A DNA stretch of 64,000 nt from Klebsormidium nitens (lineage: Eukaryota > Plantae > Klebsormidiophyceae). The notes under the pieces were generated by a model. The model saw nothing but the letters and a program-made list of their open reading frames with translations. It had not been told where the DNA came from and made no database searches. Location of the stretch: the NCBI GenBank assembly GCA_000708835.1, contig DF237042.1, positions 62,001 to 126,000 on the forward strand, written 5' to 3'. The position numbers and the translations under genes are program-made. Each line of letters begins with the position of its first letter. The stretch's first letter is position 1. This document shows positions 43,302 through 52,531 of this stretch, in pieces.

Positions 43302-46221
43302 ATGGATCAGCTGCTCCGGGCCACTGGAAAGGTGGCTCGGAGTCGGTTCCCACGCGAAGCTGTCCTGAGGGCACTAGGGGTGGGCGCAGAACAGACCCCT
43401 AGAACTGGATGCAGATCTTTTTCTGCCACCACGCCTCCGACTCCACCCGCTGAAGTGAACAAGGATAAGGCAGTTGGTTCCACGGCAGAGGCAAAGAAAG
43501 ATGGGACCGCGCCTCCTCCGCCCCCGCCGCCCCCTCCAGAGAAGACTTCGTTTGGGGGCCTGAAAGATGAGGACCGCATCTTCACCAACCTGTATGGTTT
43601 GCACGATCCCTACCTCAAGGGGGCCATGAAGCGGGGTGACTGGCACCAGACCAAGGTAAGTAGCTGTGAGTTGATCTCCTGTTCGTGGATGGTCTGGAAG
43701 TCATTTAGGAACGTCCGTTCAGTCAACACTTGCGCTGCCAACACAGAATTACCGGATTACAGTCTGCTTTGCCTCATCACCAATACTACTCAATAGGGTT
43801 GCTGGCAATGCTGCTAAGTGTTGATTGGAATTCGGATTAACCAGATACCTGCAGAATATATGCAGAGGCATCCAAATGGGTCCATGCTTGTGCCGCGCTT
43901 GCGGTCAAAGCTGTTGATGGATTTCAGAGGTTGCAGTTTTCTCCATTCATTTCGTCGGACATATTTGTTGGCCACCTACGCAGGATTTTTTTGGGCAGCC
44001 GCATGTGCAGCACTCTATCATTATGAAGGTCTTTGTTCATACAAGCTGAGCTGCTTTTCAAAAAGTTGGGAAAAAAGAGTTTCTTTCCATCGTCTTCAAT
44101 CTGTGCAGGCAGTTGATCACATCTCCTGGTTCATTACTGCTTTACAACAGGAACCAGCGAATTTTCCCAATTCTTCTCTCACTTCGGCAAGGCATCTCCC
44201 CAAGCTACTTACATAAGTCCAGGGGTGATAAGAAGGGACAGGTGCTTGTAACTATCATACTTGGCATGGGGTACGAACACATCCCATTGACCACGCCCCA
44301 TTCTCCATTGCAGGAGCTAGTTCTCAAGGGCCCGGACTGGATCGTCGGCGAGATCAAGAAGTCTGGTCTGCGAGGACGCGGCGGCGCTGGCTTCCCCTCT
44401 GGCCTCAAGTGGTCCTTCATGCCCAAGGCGTCAGACGGGAGGCCGTCTTACTTGGTGGTCAACGCAGATGAGTCTGAGCCTGGGACCTGCAAGGACAGAG
44501 AGATCATGCGCCACGATCCTCACAAGCTCCTGGAGGGGTGCCTTATTGCGGGAACGGCCATGAGGGCACGCGCGGCGTACATCTACATCCGGGGGGAGTA
44601 CGTGAATGAGCGGCTGGCACTGGAGAAGGCGAGGCAGGAGGCCTACAAAGCAGGTAAGGGCGCCGCTGTGCTTTTTGACAGGTGACAAAACCCGTGTTAT
44701 GATATTTGAGGTTTGTATTTTTTCCTGCTCATCTCCTTCGCTGTGATCAATATCAATATATATCGCTGTGACCAAACCATGACCATCAGGCGCTGACAGT
44801 GGTTGTGCCCTTCGAAGGCTGCTTTCCAGCGTTTGGACATCACCTTCACTGCCTACCATTTCGACAACTGCTTAATTAGCACTTGCACTCACTTTTCAGC
44901 TTCCTAAACCTGCCAATCAGCCCTATTTCCTTCCCCCTCTTTCTTTCTTTGCCCATCATGCTTTTGCTTCTCGCTCTTGTTGACATACTCCCCCCCTTGC
45001 CCCAGGCCTGCTCGGCAACAATGCAGCCGGCAGTGGCAAGGACTTTGACGTGTACATCCACTTTGGCGCGGGCGCCTACATCTGCGGCGAGGAGACCGCG
45101 CTCCTGGAGTCGCTCGAGGGCAAGCAGGGCAAGCCGCGCCTGAAGCCCCCCTTCCCCGCCAACGTCGGCCTCTACGGCTGCCCGTCCACCGTAACCAACG
45201 TGGAAACGGTTGCGGTGGCCCCGACCATCCTGCGCCGTGGGCCCGAGTGGTTCTCCAGCTTCGGGCGCAAGAACAACTCGGGCACGAAGCTGTTCTGCAT
45301 CTCGGGCCACGTGAACAAGCCGTGCACCGTCGAGGAGGAGATGAGCATCCCGCTCAAGGAGCTGATCGAGCGGCACGCGGGCGGGGTGCGGGGCGGGTGG
45401 GACAACCTGCTGGCCATCATTCCGGGGGGGTCGTCCGTTCCGTTGCTGCCGAAGAAGGTGTGTGACGACATCATGATGGACTTTGACGCGCTCAAGGCGG
45501 TGCAGTCGGGGCTCGGGACGGCGGCGGTGATTGTGATGGACAAGAGCACGGACGTGGTCGACGCGATCGCGCGGCTGGCGTACTTCTACAAGCACGAGAG
45601 CTGCGGGCAGTGCACGCCGTGCCGCGAGGGGACGGGCTGGCTGTGGAGCATCCTGGAGAGGATGAAGGTGAGGCCGACCGCAGGAAGGAAGCGAGATTTG
45701 TCCACGTCCATCCTTTTAGGCATGCATGCGTGCTGTTGTCTATGAAGACCTGGTCTACAGATGCCTGTTTGCGCGCCAGTGACTTGCGGCGGAGTGGACG
45801 TGGACAGCGGATCTTGGTCTGCTTGCGCATGTTACACTTGCAACACGCTGGTTTTCGTTCGCGGGCTTATTTGGTTGAGCGGCCTTATCGGGAAGAAGAT
45901 GGTCATCCCTCCGCAATCGCCTACTCTCTGTGCATCAAGATTTGTATTCGGCAGTGCCTCGTTTTAAACGGATAGAACAGCAATCAATGACAATCATTGC
46001 GCTTTCTCCAGGTGGGCGATGCCAAGCTGGAGGAGATCGACATGTTGCAGGAGATTACGAAGCAGATTGAGGGCCACACTATTTGCGCTCTTGGCGACGC
46101 GGCTGCTTGGCCCGTCCAGGGTTTGATCAGGCACTTCCGACCCGAGCTGGAGCGCAGGATTTTGGACCGTGCTGCGCGCGAGAGGGAGGAGGAGCCGGAA
46201 GAGAGGTTGGCGGTGGCATAA
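43302..46221 (+). CDS. NDUFV1: NADH:ubiquinone oxidoreductase 51-kDa FMN subunit (complex I)
   Basis: Exons 43302-43655, 44314-44653, 45006-45667 and 46012-46221. Motifs [45 protein letters not shown] and the 4Fe-4S motif [11 protein letters not shown]...TICALGD; N-terminal mitochondrial presequence. Confidence 0.98.
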
Positions 46222-47885
46222 TGCATCCAGGCAATACATAGCAGCAAAACGAAGGTCCAAATATTGTCGAATATCAGAAGGGAGGTACGCTGGTGGTATG
46301 ACAGGGGTGATTGTTCGGCTGGAGAGGTACTAAATGTCAACCATCGTGCGATCACGGACCTTTTCAAAGCAGAACCGGTTTAGTCAGCTTGGGGTGCTTG
46401 TACGGGGAACCCTTCTACCAATGCCACGCATGTTGCTTCACTAGTTCCCTTACCGCAGGCCAAACATACATTTTGTGAAGTTTCAAGCTTCCCCAGTCGA
46501 TCCAAATATGTCAGTCGATTCTTGAGCCACATGGTCAACCTAAGGCTCCAGGCTTTCGTACCCGACCAGTTGGACCCAACTTGGCGACTGAGCTTGTAGT
46601 CTGAGGCTCAAGAAAGCAAAAAATGCTGGACTGCAAACGGCCAGATGCACATGCTCGGAGGGAAGTTTGTATTGTATGCATGATAGAAGGTTCACTCAGA
46701 TGGCATCAAGCTCTTGATACTGGAACGTGATCAGACGAATTGCAGCCCATGCAGTGTAATCGTCATTATAAGTTATCTACGCGGCACTGTGCATGCAACT
46801 TGTCTATCGCAGCTAGTATCCCCGGCCGGGCCATGCACCTTTTATATAATCCGTTCAGTTATTGAGCAGGCTCGTGATAAGTTGCATGTGCAAATCATAC
46901 TATGGCTAAAATCATTGATCTTACATAATTAATATGTTCCGACGTTTTGATTCGCATTACCGTAACATTGAATCATTTCTATATAAAGGATTTGTACATA
47001 TGTATATATGTCTGATCGATCGAGCGCCAATAATAAGACGTTCGGGCATTCAATTGTTGAGTCATATATATTGGGCCGCGGCATGGCGGCCCCCTGTACG
47101 TACCGTCCTACATACCATGCATGCATGGTGCACTGAGGCCGCCCTAGCTCTAGTGCGGCGGCAGTGTACCGCCCGCCCATTGATTGATTGGTTGGATCAT
47201 TGCCCATGCATTAAACCTAGTTCGCCGCGCTGAAGTGCGCTGGAATCGCTGCATGCACAAGCTTCGTGCAGATACTTGATTATGCATTTGTGAAATTACA
47301 GTCATATTTTAAAAATCATGATGGCACTGTTATCGAATGTTCAACACTGGTGAGCTTAATTGATGCAATTCAATTTAGCTTACTTTCTATTACTTTTCAG
47401 GATATGCATATGGATTGGACGGTTACTTGAGGAGACCGGCTCCGATGATCGAATCTGGCATATTGAGCGATGTCGGGCACGTATCTAACATGGATGGTGC
47501 CGCCGTATAGGCTGGCCGGGCACGTGCCAAGTTGCAACGTATGGGCCTGTTGCAACGCAGTTTCACATGGCTGGCCTCCACGACTTCCTCGGGTGCTGCT
47601 TAGTGGCTGATGACGAGTCATGCATGCATATAAGTGACAAAGCGACCTATCGCGACATCAGCTCAGAAGTAAGCGTTGGCTGAACAAAATACAAAATAGC
47701 AGCGAGGTACTGGACTCGGGATCAGATTCGGATTGACCGTTGCGTGCTGCATAACCTTGAAGAACAATATCAAAATGGAACAAGCTCAGAGCAGGCTTCT
47801 ACCCGCTATTGCCATTCTTAGGTACACTACACCTCCGCTCAATGGGGCAGCGATTGTAAAGGGTATACAAGGAACGAATGGTCGT

Positions 47886-50800
47886 CTAAGCTACAGGCTC
47901 TGGAATCTCCTCCCCGCCCTCTAATTCTTGGTCGAAATGCCACACACCGTAACCCTTTCCAACCCGCCTGAGCTGTCGCACCTGCTCGGCAGTCCGCTTC
48001 AACTTCTCAATCTGCAGAACGAAGAGCCTTGATAAGTGAGTTATGTAAAGAAAACAGACGGCAGCTTCTGATCAGGCGGGCTTGAAAAAGAGCCTTTAAC
48101 AACGGTTTGACTCAAGTCTCGAGCTTCTTGCTGAACGCGTCGTTATTGGATGAGCTGCTTCAGTTCTTTCCCAGATATTCGGTTCTTAGCAGGTCAAAAG
48201 AGGGGGTTTCTGCAAACCATTCCTTTGGTACGTCGTATTTCCTGATTGCTCGCTTCAAATGTTATATCATGCAATCCCGGACGGTTCGTCGACAATGCCG
48301 GATGGAACATACGAAAGATCCAAGCTGATAAGGCAAACTGTAAGCAAACATTTGAGCTTAGGAGCGACTCCGAAGATCCACAAGGAAGCCTTCCGTTTGA
48401 GACTAATAACCAGCCTCGGAGTGTCAATCCGGGTTGGGTTTGTGCCTGGAGTTTCTGACGAGCCCGTAGCAGCAGATGAGCGCAAAGCAACTTGCCCCAT
48501 CTCAATGGTTACTCAACCACAGAAAAGCAGCAATTCCTTGGAAGGCCTCCACCTGATGTCTAGCTCTTACCTGGGGATGCAAGTATGTGCTCTTCACGTA
48601 GTCGTCCGCTTGGGGATCGCCGACCTCCGCAATCGCCTGAGCAAACGAGCAGAGACGCGAGAGTCAGAGGTTGAAAATCTCAGTGCAGAGGAGCTACCAG
48701 AGATCCGGCGCACATTGCATCAGTGCAGATCGTTTAACAACAACGGGAACGATCTTAAGGGCCCCGGGGGAACGTCCGACTCCTCGAACCATGCCCCCCA
48801 CGCCAGGAGGCCTCGTCCAGATAAGACAAGACTCAAATCTCGTCCACTCAACCAAGCATGATTTCGGACACTCTGATGCGCGAATCTGAGGTTCATATCG
48901 ATATTGCTCCCGAAAGTGCTTCTTTGTTCTCAATTCCCAGGTTCTCTGCCATCTTCATTGCTTGCCCCTATAAAAAGATTAGTAGTTAAATACCTTTCTA
49001 AGTAGGACAGCTTTTGAGTCAAATCCAGAAAGGGGGTCACATCGATCTTGCTTCGCAGCCCACTGTACACAATTGCAATCCACGATGCTTGTCCCGAGTA
49101 CAACCCCAAACAGAACGAAAACTGCTCAGTGGATCTTATACACAGGGAAACGACTGTCTGCTGTTGGGTTCTTTTAGATCAATCTGCTTCCGATTGGATA
49201 CAACTAAGCAGCCAAACAATTGGAATACAAACCACAGATGCCGCGCGGACTGCATCATGTTCGCTATGTCAGTATCACTATGCCCTCTCTGAAAGGACTG
49301 GCTTCTGCCCTCATACCAGTATTGCATCCAGAATTGACACATCGGCCCAGAAGAACGTGTGATACCCACAACTTATAAGCCGCCTCAGCGTCTGCAAGGC
49401 AGCAATGTAGCTACGATCCTGAACAGAGAAAGCTCCAGCGGCCTGGATCGTCCAGACTCTCATCTCCATATTGCGAAAATCTTAAAAGCGGTCTCACCGC
49501 CTGCAGTGCAAGGTACTTTTCGTTCTGGATCTTCTCCAAGCCAAGCGCCAGCTCAAACGTGTTGAGCGCGTCCCCCTTCTCGGGATCGTCGAACTCGCTG
49601 AAGGGCGCCTGCAGCGGCAGCAGCTGCACTCGTCCTCCCCTCCGATTCTGGTAGTCCGTCAGCTTGAGCGCGTCATCCAGCTCGTATTTGCTTCGGTCAT
49701 AAAAGTACCTGTTTGACAACAAGGGGCCGAAGACTCAGTCGAAAGAGGTCGTCAGCGAGAGACTGCGAAGTTGAGAGGTGCGGCCTGGGAATGCACTGTT
49801 CAGCTTGTATTTGCTCTGGCTATAGGAACACTTGCGTGGAGGCCTCTCAATGCTCTTGAAAGAGGACCGGGAGGGTAGTTTGCAAAGCGTCCAAAGAGGC
49901 AATGTTGGAGCATTGGCTATACTCGGGGGGGCCTCTCTTGAGGCTGTCGGTTTTGATGTCGATTCATGCAGGAGCGACTGTGTTAACCGACTCGTTCTTC
50001 CTCTTGATAGGGAATACAGCTCAATATGTACTGAGGAACTCCATCCAGAGTTGGCTTCTCATTCAACTACATGAAGCTGAGGTAAAGGAAGGTCCTTTTT
50101 GAAGGTAGGGGCACTCTTGAATTTGGTGACTATTCTAGTTTCAGTGGATAATTCGGACGCACACTTGCGCTCTGGGCACAACTGGCTGTCAAGAACATGG
50201 TCAATAGTCGGAATGTGTACCGCTTGAGAATGCTCGAAGGCTAGGGCGACGCTGACAATCAGCGTCGGAGCCCTCAAATTTGGAAGGAATGTTGGATGTA
50301 CAACAGCATTGCCATTTTCCTAAATCAGTCAGACGTTCTAATCATTATCGAAAAAGGTTGGAGAATAATATCTCAAAAGCTCTTGTCTTTATCAATTCTC
50401 CAGCGGGCACCTAACGCAATATTCCCGAACTAGCGGCGAGGACTTGAGTCACTCACTTGGCGACGTTCTGAAGCGCGATGTTGTCCCGATCGAAGAAGGC
50501 CGCCATGCTGTGGAATGCATAGCTGAGCGTATATGCAACATTGATTGAGTCATTGATGGCGGTCTCCGTGTCTGGAGAGTAGCGCTGCCTGGCCAGCGAT
50601 GTGTCGTTGCCTCGTTGGTCCACAAGGTCAAGGATGCCAGACTCTTGAAGATCCTGCAGAAAAGTATCCAGGCTTCATCGCTGACTTCCTTGCGGTGGTT
50701 TGAAACAATATCCAGGTAGTTCTGGAGCAAGCTGTCTCAGTACAAATGACTGGTTGTAAGCGAAACTTTACGGCTTCTTCAAACGAGAAAAGTCAATACC

Positions 50801-51691
50801 ATGGCCACATGAGCTCGTATTTACAGCATACATGAACGACCATCCAGCGCAGGCGCCACATCCTGCACAGGACCTTTCTCTTGGGGGTCACCGTCAACAA
50901 TTATCCCGCCACACTCTCTGGTTTGGTGCCTCTGAAAGTGGACCACTTGGTAACATTGCCACTAGGTTTTCAAGAATATGTATCATAATGAGCAAAGGCT
51001 CAGATTCCTCATGACTTTCTAAATAACAAGGCTCCTCAGTAAGCCCAACTTTGATGAAGGGTGAACATGTCTCACAATTGCATGCACACAACCTATACAC
51101 GCTTGTCAGAATCATCTGCATTGAAATGACAAGCCAGCTGTTACTAAAGCCAATTCATAGAATCAATTGACACCCCCCAAACTCAAAATGGCAATACTAA
51201 ACAGCTGCTGTGGTTGGCATTCCTAGTGCCAAAAAAACATATATGGACAGAGAATCAAGAAGCATACAATAGGTGCGGTACAATGTCAATAAGAGAATGG
51301 AAATAGCTGATGCATGCACAATGCCGAAGATATATCACGCTAGAAAAAACGGCTTCTTGATCAGAACTGTACGGCATACTTGCTACAAAGAGATGCAGCT
51401 TACCTGCATCGGCCTGAAAATCTCGCCCCCAAGCACCTCTTCGCTAATTTCTTCTGTACTTCCAGCCGACACGGTTTCTAAGTCCCGATAGCTGGAGTTG
51501 CCATCTGCTGCTGCCACGATCGAAGCGCAACGTCTCCTTGAGTTAAACATGAATGGCGCGCGCTGCTTCATGAAAGCTGGCGCAACTCCTGTTGAGGACC
51601 TCACAGCATTCTGAGAGGTGGTACAAGAGGCAGGAGAGAATGCCAAAGCTTGTAGGTTCAGCACACCAGCGTGCGCCAGTGAAAACGCCAT
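47886..51691 (-). CDS. FER: Plastid-type ferritin with a degenerate ferroxidase centre
   Basis: Exons 51691-51404, 50653-50457, 49708-49498, 48636-48571 and 48011-47886 are phase-consistent. The core is gaplessly colinear with plant ferritin ([53 protein letters not shown]) and includes a transit peptide and extension peptide. Confidence 0.95.
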
Positions 51692-52531
51692 AGCTGCGGC
51701 GCAGATCTGAAACGAACCCTGATCTTTACAATGGCCAACCGTGCTGCCGCCCAGAAACAAGATTACAGTCTTCTCTTTAACTCCTTGTATGCTGGCGTCA
51801 AAGAGAAGCTGGAATTGGGACACTGTCAGTGTCAACATGGCAAACGTCAGGTTTGTGCATGCAGAGCACACGCCGAAATCTACCGTCGAGAACGCCACTG
51901 ATGATGATCGGAGCGCGTAGAAGTAGCCACGTAACCTACAAACTTCGGGCGAGGTCCTTGGCGCGTCACCTTATCAGTGAGCGGTTGCCACCGGATGCAG
52001 AACTCTGCTGGTGTAGTGCAGGGTGTCGCTATACTAGGTTTATAGACCTATTAGGTATGGCCGGTATTACACAGGAGCTCCTCTAAGTTGCTCTATCTAA
52101 TTAGGCAGGATAGGGCCCCAAATGATGCCCTCCCCATCCGAGCTTAAACTTAGCTCTTGAGAGCTCATTCAGCAACTCTTTGGGCCACAGCGCCTAGGTT
52201 CTTTGCGGTGGCATTCAGTATCTGGTGCAGCTCGTCTGGCCTGCCCATTGCCTAGCTTTCGGAGAGCTGCGTGGACTTCGCTTCACTTCATGAGCTTCGC
52301 GTCTGAAGCATTCAGATTGCTTTTACTTCGAAAGTCTTATCCCTTCAGCTTTGAAGGGCGTACCTTTGCATCAAGCTGAGAGTCCGATCAATTGCTTTCT
52401 TGGAAAGCCAGATCACAGCGGCGTATGTCATGGTGCCATTGATCTCAGAGGCACACTTCGAAGACCAGATGCTTGGGGGGTTTGCCACATAATCAAAGCC
52501 TGGGTATTCAGACGAGGCTTAGAAGGGAGTC

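What the first reader, a model, noticed from the sequence alone, without database searches (positions are those of the whole stretch)
47886..51691. Full-length plant-type ferritin that has lost its ferroxidase centre and iron-entry residues (candidate L-like or non-iron cage subunit)
Seen: the spliced protein aligns without gaps to plant ferritin, with human-H numbering E27->A (GCA at 50536-50534; [11 protein letters not shown]), Y34->F, E61->Y, H65->D ([16 protein letters not shown]), E134->K and E140->P ([16 protein letters not shown]). E62, E107, D131 and Q141 are kept. The transit peptide, extension peptide, AB/BC-loop motifs and the E-helix [11 protein letters not shown] are intact, with no stops or frameshifts. 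Known: E27/E62/H65/E107/Q141 form the di-iron site and D131/E134 line the 3-fold channel; characterised plant ferritins are ferroxidase-active, while inactive L-type chains are known from animals. Inference: a plastid pseudo-enzyme ferritin that co-assembles with an active paralog to tune the cage, binds another metal, or has a structural/stress role. This would be an unrecognised two-subunit ferritin system in the green lineage.
Basis: partly seen in the sequence, partly recalled or inferred. Interest (0 to 1): 0.78.

Follow-up and report, generated by a model that had tools for sequence, protein, structure and literature searches.

The report
Non-catalytic plastid ferritin in Klebsormidium
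A green alga related to land plants has an expressed, strongly conserved plant-type ferritin gene in which the iron-oxidising site, the iron entry pore and the iron transit site are all replaced, so the textbook rule that every plant-type ferritin subunit is catalytic does not hold for these algae.

Summary
A five-exon minus-strand gene (51691-47886) encodes a 295-aa plant-type ferritin, identical to GenBank GAQ81875.1 "Ferritin" of Klebsormidium nitens. It carries E27A, Y34F, E61Y, H65D, E134K and E140P (human-H numbering). E62, E107, D131 and Q141 are kept.

- **Expression:** spliced contigs from four studies carry all four joints, with no letter differences from the genome.
- **Selection:** it is not decaying. 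Mature-region dN/dS is 0.02-0.05 against two Klebsormidium orthologues, while introns have diverged to 50-60% identity.
- **Conservation of the signature:** Mesotaenium, an unnamed transcriptome and, largely, Chara share the same replacements.
- **Phylogeny:** the tree gives one streptophyte-algal clade of ferroxidase-less ferritins (99/98 support; 98/94 with the signature columns removed).
- **Fold:** the predicted structure matches soybean ferritin.

My best reading is a non-catalytic cage subunit of the plastid ferritin system. It resembles the animal L chain in role only and arose independently.

A canonical partner was shown only in Mesotaenium, not in K. nitens. No paper describing such proteins was found.

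The scan had already flagged a more divergent ferroxidase-dead ferritin pair about 25 kb away in this genome. This gene is a third paralogue, and the best conserved.

The parts
51404..51691 (-). Exon 1 (codons 1-96): start codon, plastid-type presequence and the start of the extension-peptide region
   Evidence: joint 51403/50652. The first 62 residues have 0 acidic, 6 basic and 25 Ser/Thr/Ala residues.
50457..50653 (-). Exon 2: extension peptide and helix A, with S132 (Q23), A136 (E27, GCA 50536-50534) and F143 (Y34)
49498..49708 (-). Exon 3: helix B, BC loop and helix C, with Y170 (E61), E171 (E62 kept), D174 (H65), E220 (E107 kept) and Y227 (L114)
   Evidence: Matches Pfam PF00210 and aligns gap-free to soybean and Ulva ferritin.
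48571..48636 (-). Exon 4: start of helix D, with D244 (D131 kept), K247 (E134), P253 (E140, equivalent to the soybean SFER4 E173 transit site) and Q254 (Q141 kept)
47886..48011 (-). Exon 5: rest of helix D, DE turn, helix E (motif [11 protein letters not shown], with Tyr275 where canonical proteins have the 4-fold-channel His), C-terminus and the TAG stop
51692..51786 (-). 5' untranslated region, minimum extent
   Evidence: Spliced contigs reach 51786 (X1) and 51778 (X19); there is no depth at 51789-51900.
47700..47885 (-). 3' untranslated region, minimum extent (the contigs run past the stretch that was laid)
   Evidence: table 8

Best explanation
This is a real, transcribed and selectively maintained gene of Klebsormidium nitens. 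It encodes a plastid-targeted plant-type ferritin subunit that still folds as a ferritin and very probably still assembles into cages, but that no longer performs the ferritin iron pathway. The inner Glu of the 3-fold entry pore is Lys. Site A of the di-iron ferroxidase centre is gone (E27A, H65D), as are its Tyr34 and Glu61. The Glu that passes iron from the centre to the cavity is Pro. The gene belongs to an old paralogue lineage found in the streptophyte algae Klebsormidium, Chara and Mesotaenium. That lineage split from the catalytic plastid ferritin and is absent from land plants in the databases searched. I infer that it works as a non-catalytic cage subunit, equivalent in role to the animal L chain but of independent origin. 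It would either mix with other ferritin paralogues and lower or tune the iron uptake of the cage, or form cages of its own that are not iron stores. E62, an acidic residue at position 65, E107 and Q141 stay conserved, so a reduced, probably single-metal site may remain. What is shown: the gene structure, expression, selection, the residue replacements and their conservation, the clade, and the fold. What is inferred: plastid location, cage assembly, loss of activity, and co-assembly with other subunits.
For: - Gene model and identity to GAQ81875.1.
- All four splice joints appear in contigs of four runs from four studies. Exon depth is 36-790 against 0-34 in introns, with no letter differences.
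- dN/dS over the mature region is 0.023 against a Logan genomic orthologue (dS 0.48) and 0.046 against a JGI transcript.
- Introns are only 50-60% identical, while the mature coding sequence is 91% identical at the nucleotide level.
- The same replacements occur in Klebsormidium (three sequences), Mesotaenium P0039 and P0005. A27, F34, D65, Y114 and P140 also occur in Chara P0189 and P0249.
- The profile search of 1.84 billion representatives scores the subclade at 400-415 bits, and the next hit, a canonical ferritin, at 259 bits.
- The careful tree supports the streptophyte variant clade at 99/98, and at 98/94 after removing 21 signature columns.
- The AF2 model has pLDDT 92.3, and its best structural matches are soybean SFER4 at TM 0.87/0.92.
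- Sixty of 77 highly conserved canonical columns are kept, and the replaced ones are enriched for iron-path residues.
- P253 aligns to chain position 173 of soybean SFER4, the residue changed in the E173A entry 3A9Q; the 3A68 entry title describes a metal transit site.
- Mesotaenium has both a canonical gene (P0123) and a variant gene (P0039).
Against: - No biochemical data exist. Loss of activity is inferred from residues, and E62, E107 and Q141 plus a carboxylate at 65 could still bind metal.
- No canonical ferritin partner was found for K. nitens. My searches could not cover its whole proteome or genome, so co-assembly there is unsupported.
- Cage assembly was not modelled, because only single-chain prediction was available.
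- Cavity-facing carboxylates on helix B are reduced. This argues against an L-chain-like nucleating role.
- Plastid targeting rests only on the composition of the presequence and on homology.
Confidence: 0.6

Rival explanations
1. It forms a homo-oligomeric cage, or a cage built only from variant paralogues, with a function unrelated to iron storage. Examples would be a stress-protective or chaperone-like cage, in the manner of the ferritin homologue artemin of Artemia cysts, or a container or buffer for another metal, in a desiccation-tolerant terrestrial alga.
For: K. nitens has at least four variant ferritin genes: this one, the pair on L004, and P0260. No canonical ferritin turned up. Both the entry pore and the cavity carboxylates are altered. 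E62, D/E65, E107, Q141 and the new Y114 are conserved, which suggests a remodelled site and not a decayed one.
Against: The absence of a canonical K. nitens ferritin is not established. Mesotaenium keeps a canonical gene beside the variant. There is no long C-terminal extension of the artemin kind. No expression data linked to stress were available.
Confidence: 0.22
2. It is still an iron-oxidising ferritin, using a remodelled centre (E62, D65, E107, Q141, perhaps Y61 or Y114) and another entry route, so the changes adjust activity without abolishing it.
For: Three of the six centre residues and D131 are retained and invariant in the clade. The carboxylate at position 65 is conserved as D or E.
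Against: Site A loses two of its three ligands (E27A, H65D). Tyr34, Glu61, the transit Glu and the inner pore Glu are all replaced together, and these replacements are fixed across lineages. From general knowledge, E62K/H65G and comparable site-A mutants of H-type ferritins lose fast ferroxidase activity.
Confidence: 0.12
3. It is a decaying duplicate (an incipient pseudogene) or an artefact of annotation or assembly.
For: It lies about 25 kb from two other degenerate-looking ferritin genes.
Against: The frame is intact. The mRNA is correctly spliced in four studies with no sequence differences. dN/dS is 0.02-0.05. Orthologues with the same signature occur in other classes of algae.
Confidence: 0.02

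Closest known systems
Plant (plastid) H-type ferritin, e.g. soybean SFER4 (PDB 3A68), Setaria ferritin (7XZ4), Ulva pertusa ferritin (3VNX)
   Same: It is 49-52% identical over the mature protein. It has the same fold, including the extension-peptide helix and helix E, and a gap-free core alignment. It has a plastid-type presequence, and the BC-loop and DE-turn/E-helix motifs are conserved.
   Different: Glu27, Tyr34, Glu61 and His65 of the ferroxidase centre are replaced. So are Glu134 of the 3-fold pore and the transit-site Glu (SFER4 E173). In Klebsormidium the 4-fold-channel His is Tyr.
Vertebrate L-chain ferritin
   Same: It is a ferritin subunit with no complete ferroxidase centre, encoded beside catalytic paralogues (shown here for Mesotaenium).
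   Different: It has an independent origin, nested inside green-lineage plastid ferritins. It keeps Glu62 where the L chain has the Lys62-Glu107 salt bridge. It has fewer cavity carboxylates than canonical plant ferritin, where the L chain has more. Its 3-fold pore Glu134 is changed to Lys. The L-chain features are cited from general knowledge and the review PMC7557750.
Neighbouring ferroxidase-dead ferritin pair of K. nitens (GAQ81881.1 and its 322-aa head-to-head partner; scan finding s1-267524) and Chara braunii GBG66951.1, GBG73203.1, GBG67961.1
   Same: They fall in the same streptophyte variant clade (99/98). The Chara proteins share A27, F34, D65, Y114 and P140.
   Different: This gene is far less diverged, at about 50-55% identity to canonical ferritins against about 35-40% for the pair. 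It keeps E62, E107, D131 and Q141. Its closest relatives are in Mesotaenium, in a separate subclade (100/95).
Artemin (ferritin homologue of Artemia cysts)
   Same: It is a ferritin-fold protein without ferroxidase residues in a desiccation-tolerant organism. This comparison is from memory and was not tested here.
   Different: There is no long C-terminal extension. It is plastid-targeted and of plant type. No chaperone evidence exists.

Membership tests
Ferritin family (Pfam PF00210, eukaryotic 24-mer ferritin fold) | Domain match above Pfam's gathering score | tested here: met
   PF00210 scores 69.3 bits against a cut-off of 24.5. The canonical Mesotaenium protein scores 110 bits.
Ferritin family (Pfam PF00210, eukaryotic 24-mer ferritin fold) | Four-helix bundle with a long BC loop and a short fifth helix E | tested here: met
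   The AF2 model has pLDDT 92.3, with helices at 38-65, 73-99, 123-152, 155-186 and 190-199 of the modelled part. TM-score to 3A68 is 0.87/0.92.
Ferritin family (Pfam PF00210, eukaryotic 24-mer ferritin fold) | Assembly into a 24-subunit cage | not testable with these tools
   Only single-chain prediction was available. Interface-rich motifs (BC loop, DE turn, helix E) are conserved.
Plant-type plastid ferritin | N-terminal transit peptide plus an extension peptide before helix A | tested here: met
   The presequence has 0 acidic and 25 Ser/Thr/Ala residues in its first 62. The extension-peptide region aligns to soybean and Setaria with small gaps and is modelled as a helix. Actual import was not tested.
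H-type (catalytic) ferritin subunit | Complete ferroxidase centre: Glu27, Tyr34, Glu62, His65, Glu107, Gln141 (list as given in PMC7557750) | tested here: not met
   The residues are Ala, Phe, Glu, Asp, Glu and Gln, so three of six are replaced. Glu61 is also replaced by Tyr.
H-type (catalytic) ferritin subunit | Acidic 3-fold entry channel (Asp131 and Glu134) and, in plants, the transit-site Glu (SFER4 E173) | tested here: not met
   Asp131 is kept, Glu134 is Lys, and the transit Glu is Pro.
Vertebrate L-type ferritin | Descent from the animal L-chain lineage | tested here: not met
   It is nested within green-lineage ferritins next to the canonical streptophyte proteins.
Vertebrate L-type ferritin | Lys62-Glu107 salt bridge in place of the centre, and extra cavity carboxylates for nucleation | tested here: not met
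   Glu62 is retained. Helix-B inner positions 57, 60, 61, 64 and 67 read D, K, Y, D, L, against E, E, E, E, E in canonical plant ferritin. The L-chain definition is from general knowledge.
Streptophyte-algal ferroxidase-less ferritin clade (defined in this scan) | Shared derived states A27, F34, acidic 65, Y114 and P140, plus monophyly on the tree | tested here: met
   Signature. Clade support is 99/98, and 98/94 without the signature columns.

The most novel reading that the evidence does not exclude
The clade is not a 'dead' ferritin. It would be a re-purposed plastid nanocage with a remodelled single-metal site (E62, D/E65, E107, Q141, lined by the new Y114 and F34) and a closed cation pore. 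It would serve a function other than iron storage, such as buffering another metal or protecting against stress. Klebsormidium, which carries at least four such genes, may have no catalytic ferritin at all.
Probability: 0.15. Interest if true: 0.85.

Novelty: new variant of a known kind. Interest (0 to 1): 0.62.

Why it matters
Reviews state that all plant ferritin subunits are H-type and that each carries a ferroxidase centre (PMC7557750). Non-catalytic partners are regarded as an animal feature. Here an old, conserved and expressed lineage of non-catalytic plastid ferritins appears in the algal relatives of land plants. It arose independently of the animal L chain and seems to have been lost, or never kept, in land plants. 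This gene is the least diverged member, about 50% identical to ferritins with solved structures. That makes it the most tractable one for testing what a ferroxidase-less subunit does in a plastid cage, and how iron handling changed when plants moved onto land. It is also a natural design of a ferritin cage with the whole iron path switched off.

Tried and rejected
1. **Search for a canonical ferritin of K. nitens.**
   - None appears among the listed hits of the two full-length word searches.
   - None appears among the 150 best representatives.
   - The representatives nearest to the canonical Mesotaenium protein are closer to rice ferritin and look like broken land-plant gene models.
   - This is not proof of absence. 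The lists are truncated, clusters at 50% identity can hide a member, and no tool let me search the K. nitens assembly.
2. **Metagenome scan with canonical P0123.** It gave two unrelated loci at 50% identity, which were of no use.
3. **Literature.**
   - Nine searches found no paper on ferroxidase-less plant or algal ferritins.
   - Long et al. 2008, on Chlamydomonas FER1/FER2, is not held in the library.
   - The supplements of two papers held nothing on these genes.
4. **Pseudogene reading.** Rejected on expression and dN/dS.
5. **RNA editing restoring canonical residues.** Rejected, because the transcript contigs show no letter differences.
6. **Convergent active-site changes as the cause of the clade.** Rejected, because the clade survives removal of 21 signature columns.
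7. **Second ferritin gene in the window.** None was found.
Full report
**Observation.**
The minus strand between 51691 and 47886 holds a five-exon gene: 51691-51404, 50653-50457, 49708-49498, 48636-48571 and 48011-47886. All four introns are GT..AG. The joined frame is 888 nt and encodes 295 aa without an internal stop. The product is identical to a public protein, GAQ81875.1 / A0A1Y1HTC2, named only 'Ferritin [Klebsormidium nitens]', on scaffold DF237042.1 at 109886-113691. The window holds no second ferritin gene.

GCA at 50536-50534 is Ala at the place of Glu27. The other sites are Phe for Tyr34, Tyr for Glu61, Asp for His65, Lys for Glu134 and Pro for Glu140. Glu62, Glu107, Asp131 and Gln141 are kept.

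Against solved plant ferritins (Setaria 7XZ4, soybean SFER4 3A68/3A9Q, Ulva 3VNX) the protein scores E 1e-45 to 1e-61. Residues 115-284 align without a gap, and the only gaps are three residues in the extension-peptide region. The Pro at residue 253 falls on chain position 173 of soybean SFER4. That is the residue changed in the E173A entry, and the 3A68 title describes it as a metal transit site.

**Expression.**
Contigs of four public runs from four studies were laid on 47700-51900. All four carry the four joints exactly as in the model, on contigs of depth 36-790, while intron-only contigs have depth 0-34. There is not a single letter difference or indel. The mRNA is therefore made and spliced as predicted, and it is not edited back to canonical residues. 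The transcript reaches at least 51786 at its 5' end and runs past 47700 at its 3' end. These are contigs, so they give no information on level or condition.

**Selection.**
A genomic contig of a related Klebsormidium (L003, Logan SRR23617307) carries the orthologue with the same five exons. It has the same downstream neighbour, the NADH dehydrogenase 51-kDa subunit. A JGI transcript (L002) gives a second orthologue.

| Comparison | Region | dN/dS (Nei-Gojobori) | dS |
|---|---|---|---|
| Window gene vs L003 | Mature protein (residues 97-295) | 0.023 | 0.48 |
| Window gene vs L002 | Mature protein (residues 97-295) | 0.046 | 1.43 |
| Window gene vs L003 | Presequence | 0.32 | 0.42 |
| Window gene vs L002 | Presequence | 0.16 | 2.28 |

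The four introns are only 50-60% identical between the window and L003, while the mature coding sequence is 91% identical at the nucleotide level. This is strong purifying selection and rules out decay.

**Relatives.**
Word-based searches with the full protein and with a four-sequence profile found three proteins with the same signature:
- P0003, a Klebsormidium-like JGI transcript;
- P0005, a Logan transcript from ERR12684110, organism unknown;
- P0039, Mesotaenium endlicherianum ME000241S03683.

Mesotaenium also has a canonical ferritin, P0123, with all centre residues.

A full HMMER pass over 1.84 billion representatives, using the profile of the mature parts, put the subclade at 400-415 bits and the next protein, the canonical P0123, at 259 bits. 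Nothing closer exists in that library, and no land-plant member appeared.

I tabulated the key sites in all 150 best hits and looked up names. This showed further variant ferritins:
- Chara braunii GBG66951.1 and GBG73203.1 (A27, F34, E62, D65, E107, P140, Q141) and GBG67961.1;
- K. nitens GAQ86105.1, on another scaffold, and GAQ81881.1, on this scaffold;
- a Chlorokybus protein;
- a separate group in Chlorella, Micractinium and metagenomes.

**Tree.**
The careful tree used IQ-TREE with LG+C20 PMSF on 47 rows. It unites this gene, its Klebsormidium orthologues, Mesotaenium P0039, P0005, the three Chara proteins and the two other K. nitens proteins with 99/98 support. This clade sits next to the canonical streptophyte ferritins. 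This gene's subclade with Mesotaenium has 100/95 support. The Chlorella/Micractinium variants form an independent clade among chlorophyte ferritins.

Shared active-site changes could in principle pull the rows together. I therefore removed 21 signature and iron-path columns and rebuilt the tree, and the clade stayed at 98/94. The simplest reading is a single old duplication before the split of the Klebsormidium, Chara and Zygnematophyte lines. The non-catalytic copy was then kept in these algae and lost, or never kept, in land plants. The order of these events is inferred, because the root is set by an outgroup of animal-type ferritins.

**What changed and what did not.**
Take the columns that are at least 90% conserved in 187 canonical green-lineage ferritins. 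All five subclade sequences keep 60 of them and replace 17. The replaced set contains Glu27, Tyr34, Glu61, His65, Glu134 and Glu140. That is six of the ten classical iron-path residues, against 11 of the 67 other columns (Fisher p = 0.006). It also contains Gln23 and Leu114. Leu114 is Tyr in every member, Chara included.

The BC-loop motif, the DE turn and helix E are almost unchanged. The AlphaFold model of residues 86-295 has mean pLDDT 92.3 and the full ferritin helix pattern, including the extension-peptide helices. Its best structural matches are soybean SFER4 chains at TM 0.87/0.92, followed by the other plant and algal ferritins.

The first 62 residues contain no acidic residue, six basic ones and 25 Ser/Thr/Ala. 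This composition fits a plastid transit peptide. It is an inference and import was not tested.

**Mechanism.**
The pattern is a cage subunit in which each station of the iron route has been switched off and everything else kept:
- the entry pore, where the ring of Glu134 has become Lys;
- the oxidation site, where site A has lost two of its three ligands and Tyr34 is lost;
- the hand-over to the cavity, where the transit Glu has become Pro.

Mutating site A ligands abolishes fast ferroxidase activity in H-type ferritins (general knowledge), so I take the protein to be non-catalytic.

It is not a copy of the animal L chain. Glu62 is kept, where the L chain has the Lys62-Glu107 salt bridge. The cavity face of helix B also carries fewer carboxylates than canonical plant ferritin: D, K, Y, D, L against E, E, E, E, E at positions 57, 60, 61, 64 and 67. 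A mineral-nucleating role is therefore unlikely.

Glu62, Asp/Glu65, Glu107 and Gln141 are invariant or conservatively kept across lineages that separated very long ago. This speaks for a remaining function of the site, perhaps a single metal ion.

Whether the subunit mixes with a catalytic partner is open. Mesotaenium has such a partner, but I could not find one for K. nitens and could not search its genome directly.

**Relation to earlier notes of the scan.**
The scan had already flagged a head-to-head pair of ferroxidase-dead ferritins. They lie at 138.5-148.5 kb of the same scaffold, about 25 kb from this gene, and a follow-up tied them to Chara. I fetched that locus (L004) and confirmed two ferritin genes there. 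They are much more diverged from this gene, at about 30-55% identity in short segments. My tree puts all of them in one clade, with this gene in a separate, slowly evolving subclade shared with Mesotaenium. The third note, s1-334366, falls by its coordinates inside the region of that pair.

**Novelty.**
A review states that all plant ferritin subunits are H-type with a ferroxidase centre (PMC7557750). Nine full-text searches found no description of ferroxidase-less plant or algal ferritins. The library lacks most subscription journals, so this is weak evidence of absence. The gene itself is public and auto-annotated as 'Ferritin'. I class it as a new variant of a known kind, because non-catalytic ferritin subunits are already known from animals.

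**Limits.**
- There is no biochemistry and no multimer model.
- There is no information on the conditions of expression.
- The organism behind P0005 is unknown.
- The presence of a canonical ferritin in K. nitens and in Chara is unresolved.
- dS against L002 is close to saturation.

Noticed in passing
L004:4796-14810 (DF237042.1 about 138.5-148.5 kb, roughly 25 kb from this gene): A head-to-head pair of much more diverged ferritin genes: a 322-aa product and GAQ81881.1 of 242 aa. With this gene and GAQ86105.1 on another scaffold, K. nitens has at least four ferroxidase-site-variant ferritins.
   Followed up: partly
P0240, P0338 (Chlorella vulgaris), P0296 (Micractinium conductrix), P0237 (metagenomes): A separate clade of chlorophyte (trebouxiophyte) ferritins also lacks the ferroxidase residues (e.g. 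Y/D27, A62, D65). It has 99/98 support as an independent group among chlorophyte ferritins, so the loss happened more than once in green algae.
   Followed up: partly
P0205 (Marchantia paleacea KAG6550650.1) and P0197 (Chlorokybus atmophyticus Chrsp110S01579): Two further plant-type ferritins have replaced centre residues. The Marchantia protein is a long branch inside the land-plant canonical group and could be a decaying copy or a faulty gene model. The placement of the Chlorokybus protein is unstable.
   Followed up: no
window 43302-46221 (minus strand of L005:15471-18390) and L003:8313-8492: The gene downstream of the ferritin encodes the NADH dehydrogenase 51-kDa subunit (Complex1_51K, NADH_4Fe-4S). 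The same neighbour lies beside the orthologue in the related Klebsormidium contig, so local gene order is conserved.
   Followed up: no
window 47985-51058 (introns): Low-depth contigs (depth 2-34, against 36-790 for the spliced form) cover parts of all four introns in the RNA-like runs. They could be unspliced precursor or DNA carry-over. No alternative joint was reported.
   Followed up: no
window 47949-47951: Tyr275 replaces the His of the GKGHG motif (4-fold channel) in the three Klebsormidium sequences only. Mesotaenium and P0005 keep His.
   Followed up: no
P0122 (Dendrobium chrysotoxum, 522 aa) and P0004 (Salix viminalis, 490 aa): These proteins have two complete canonical ferritin units in tandem. 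They are probably fused gene models of adjacent ferritin genes. They scored high in the profile search only because of the doubled domain.
   Followed up: no
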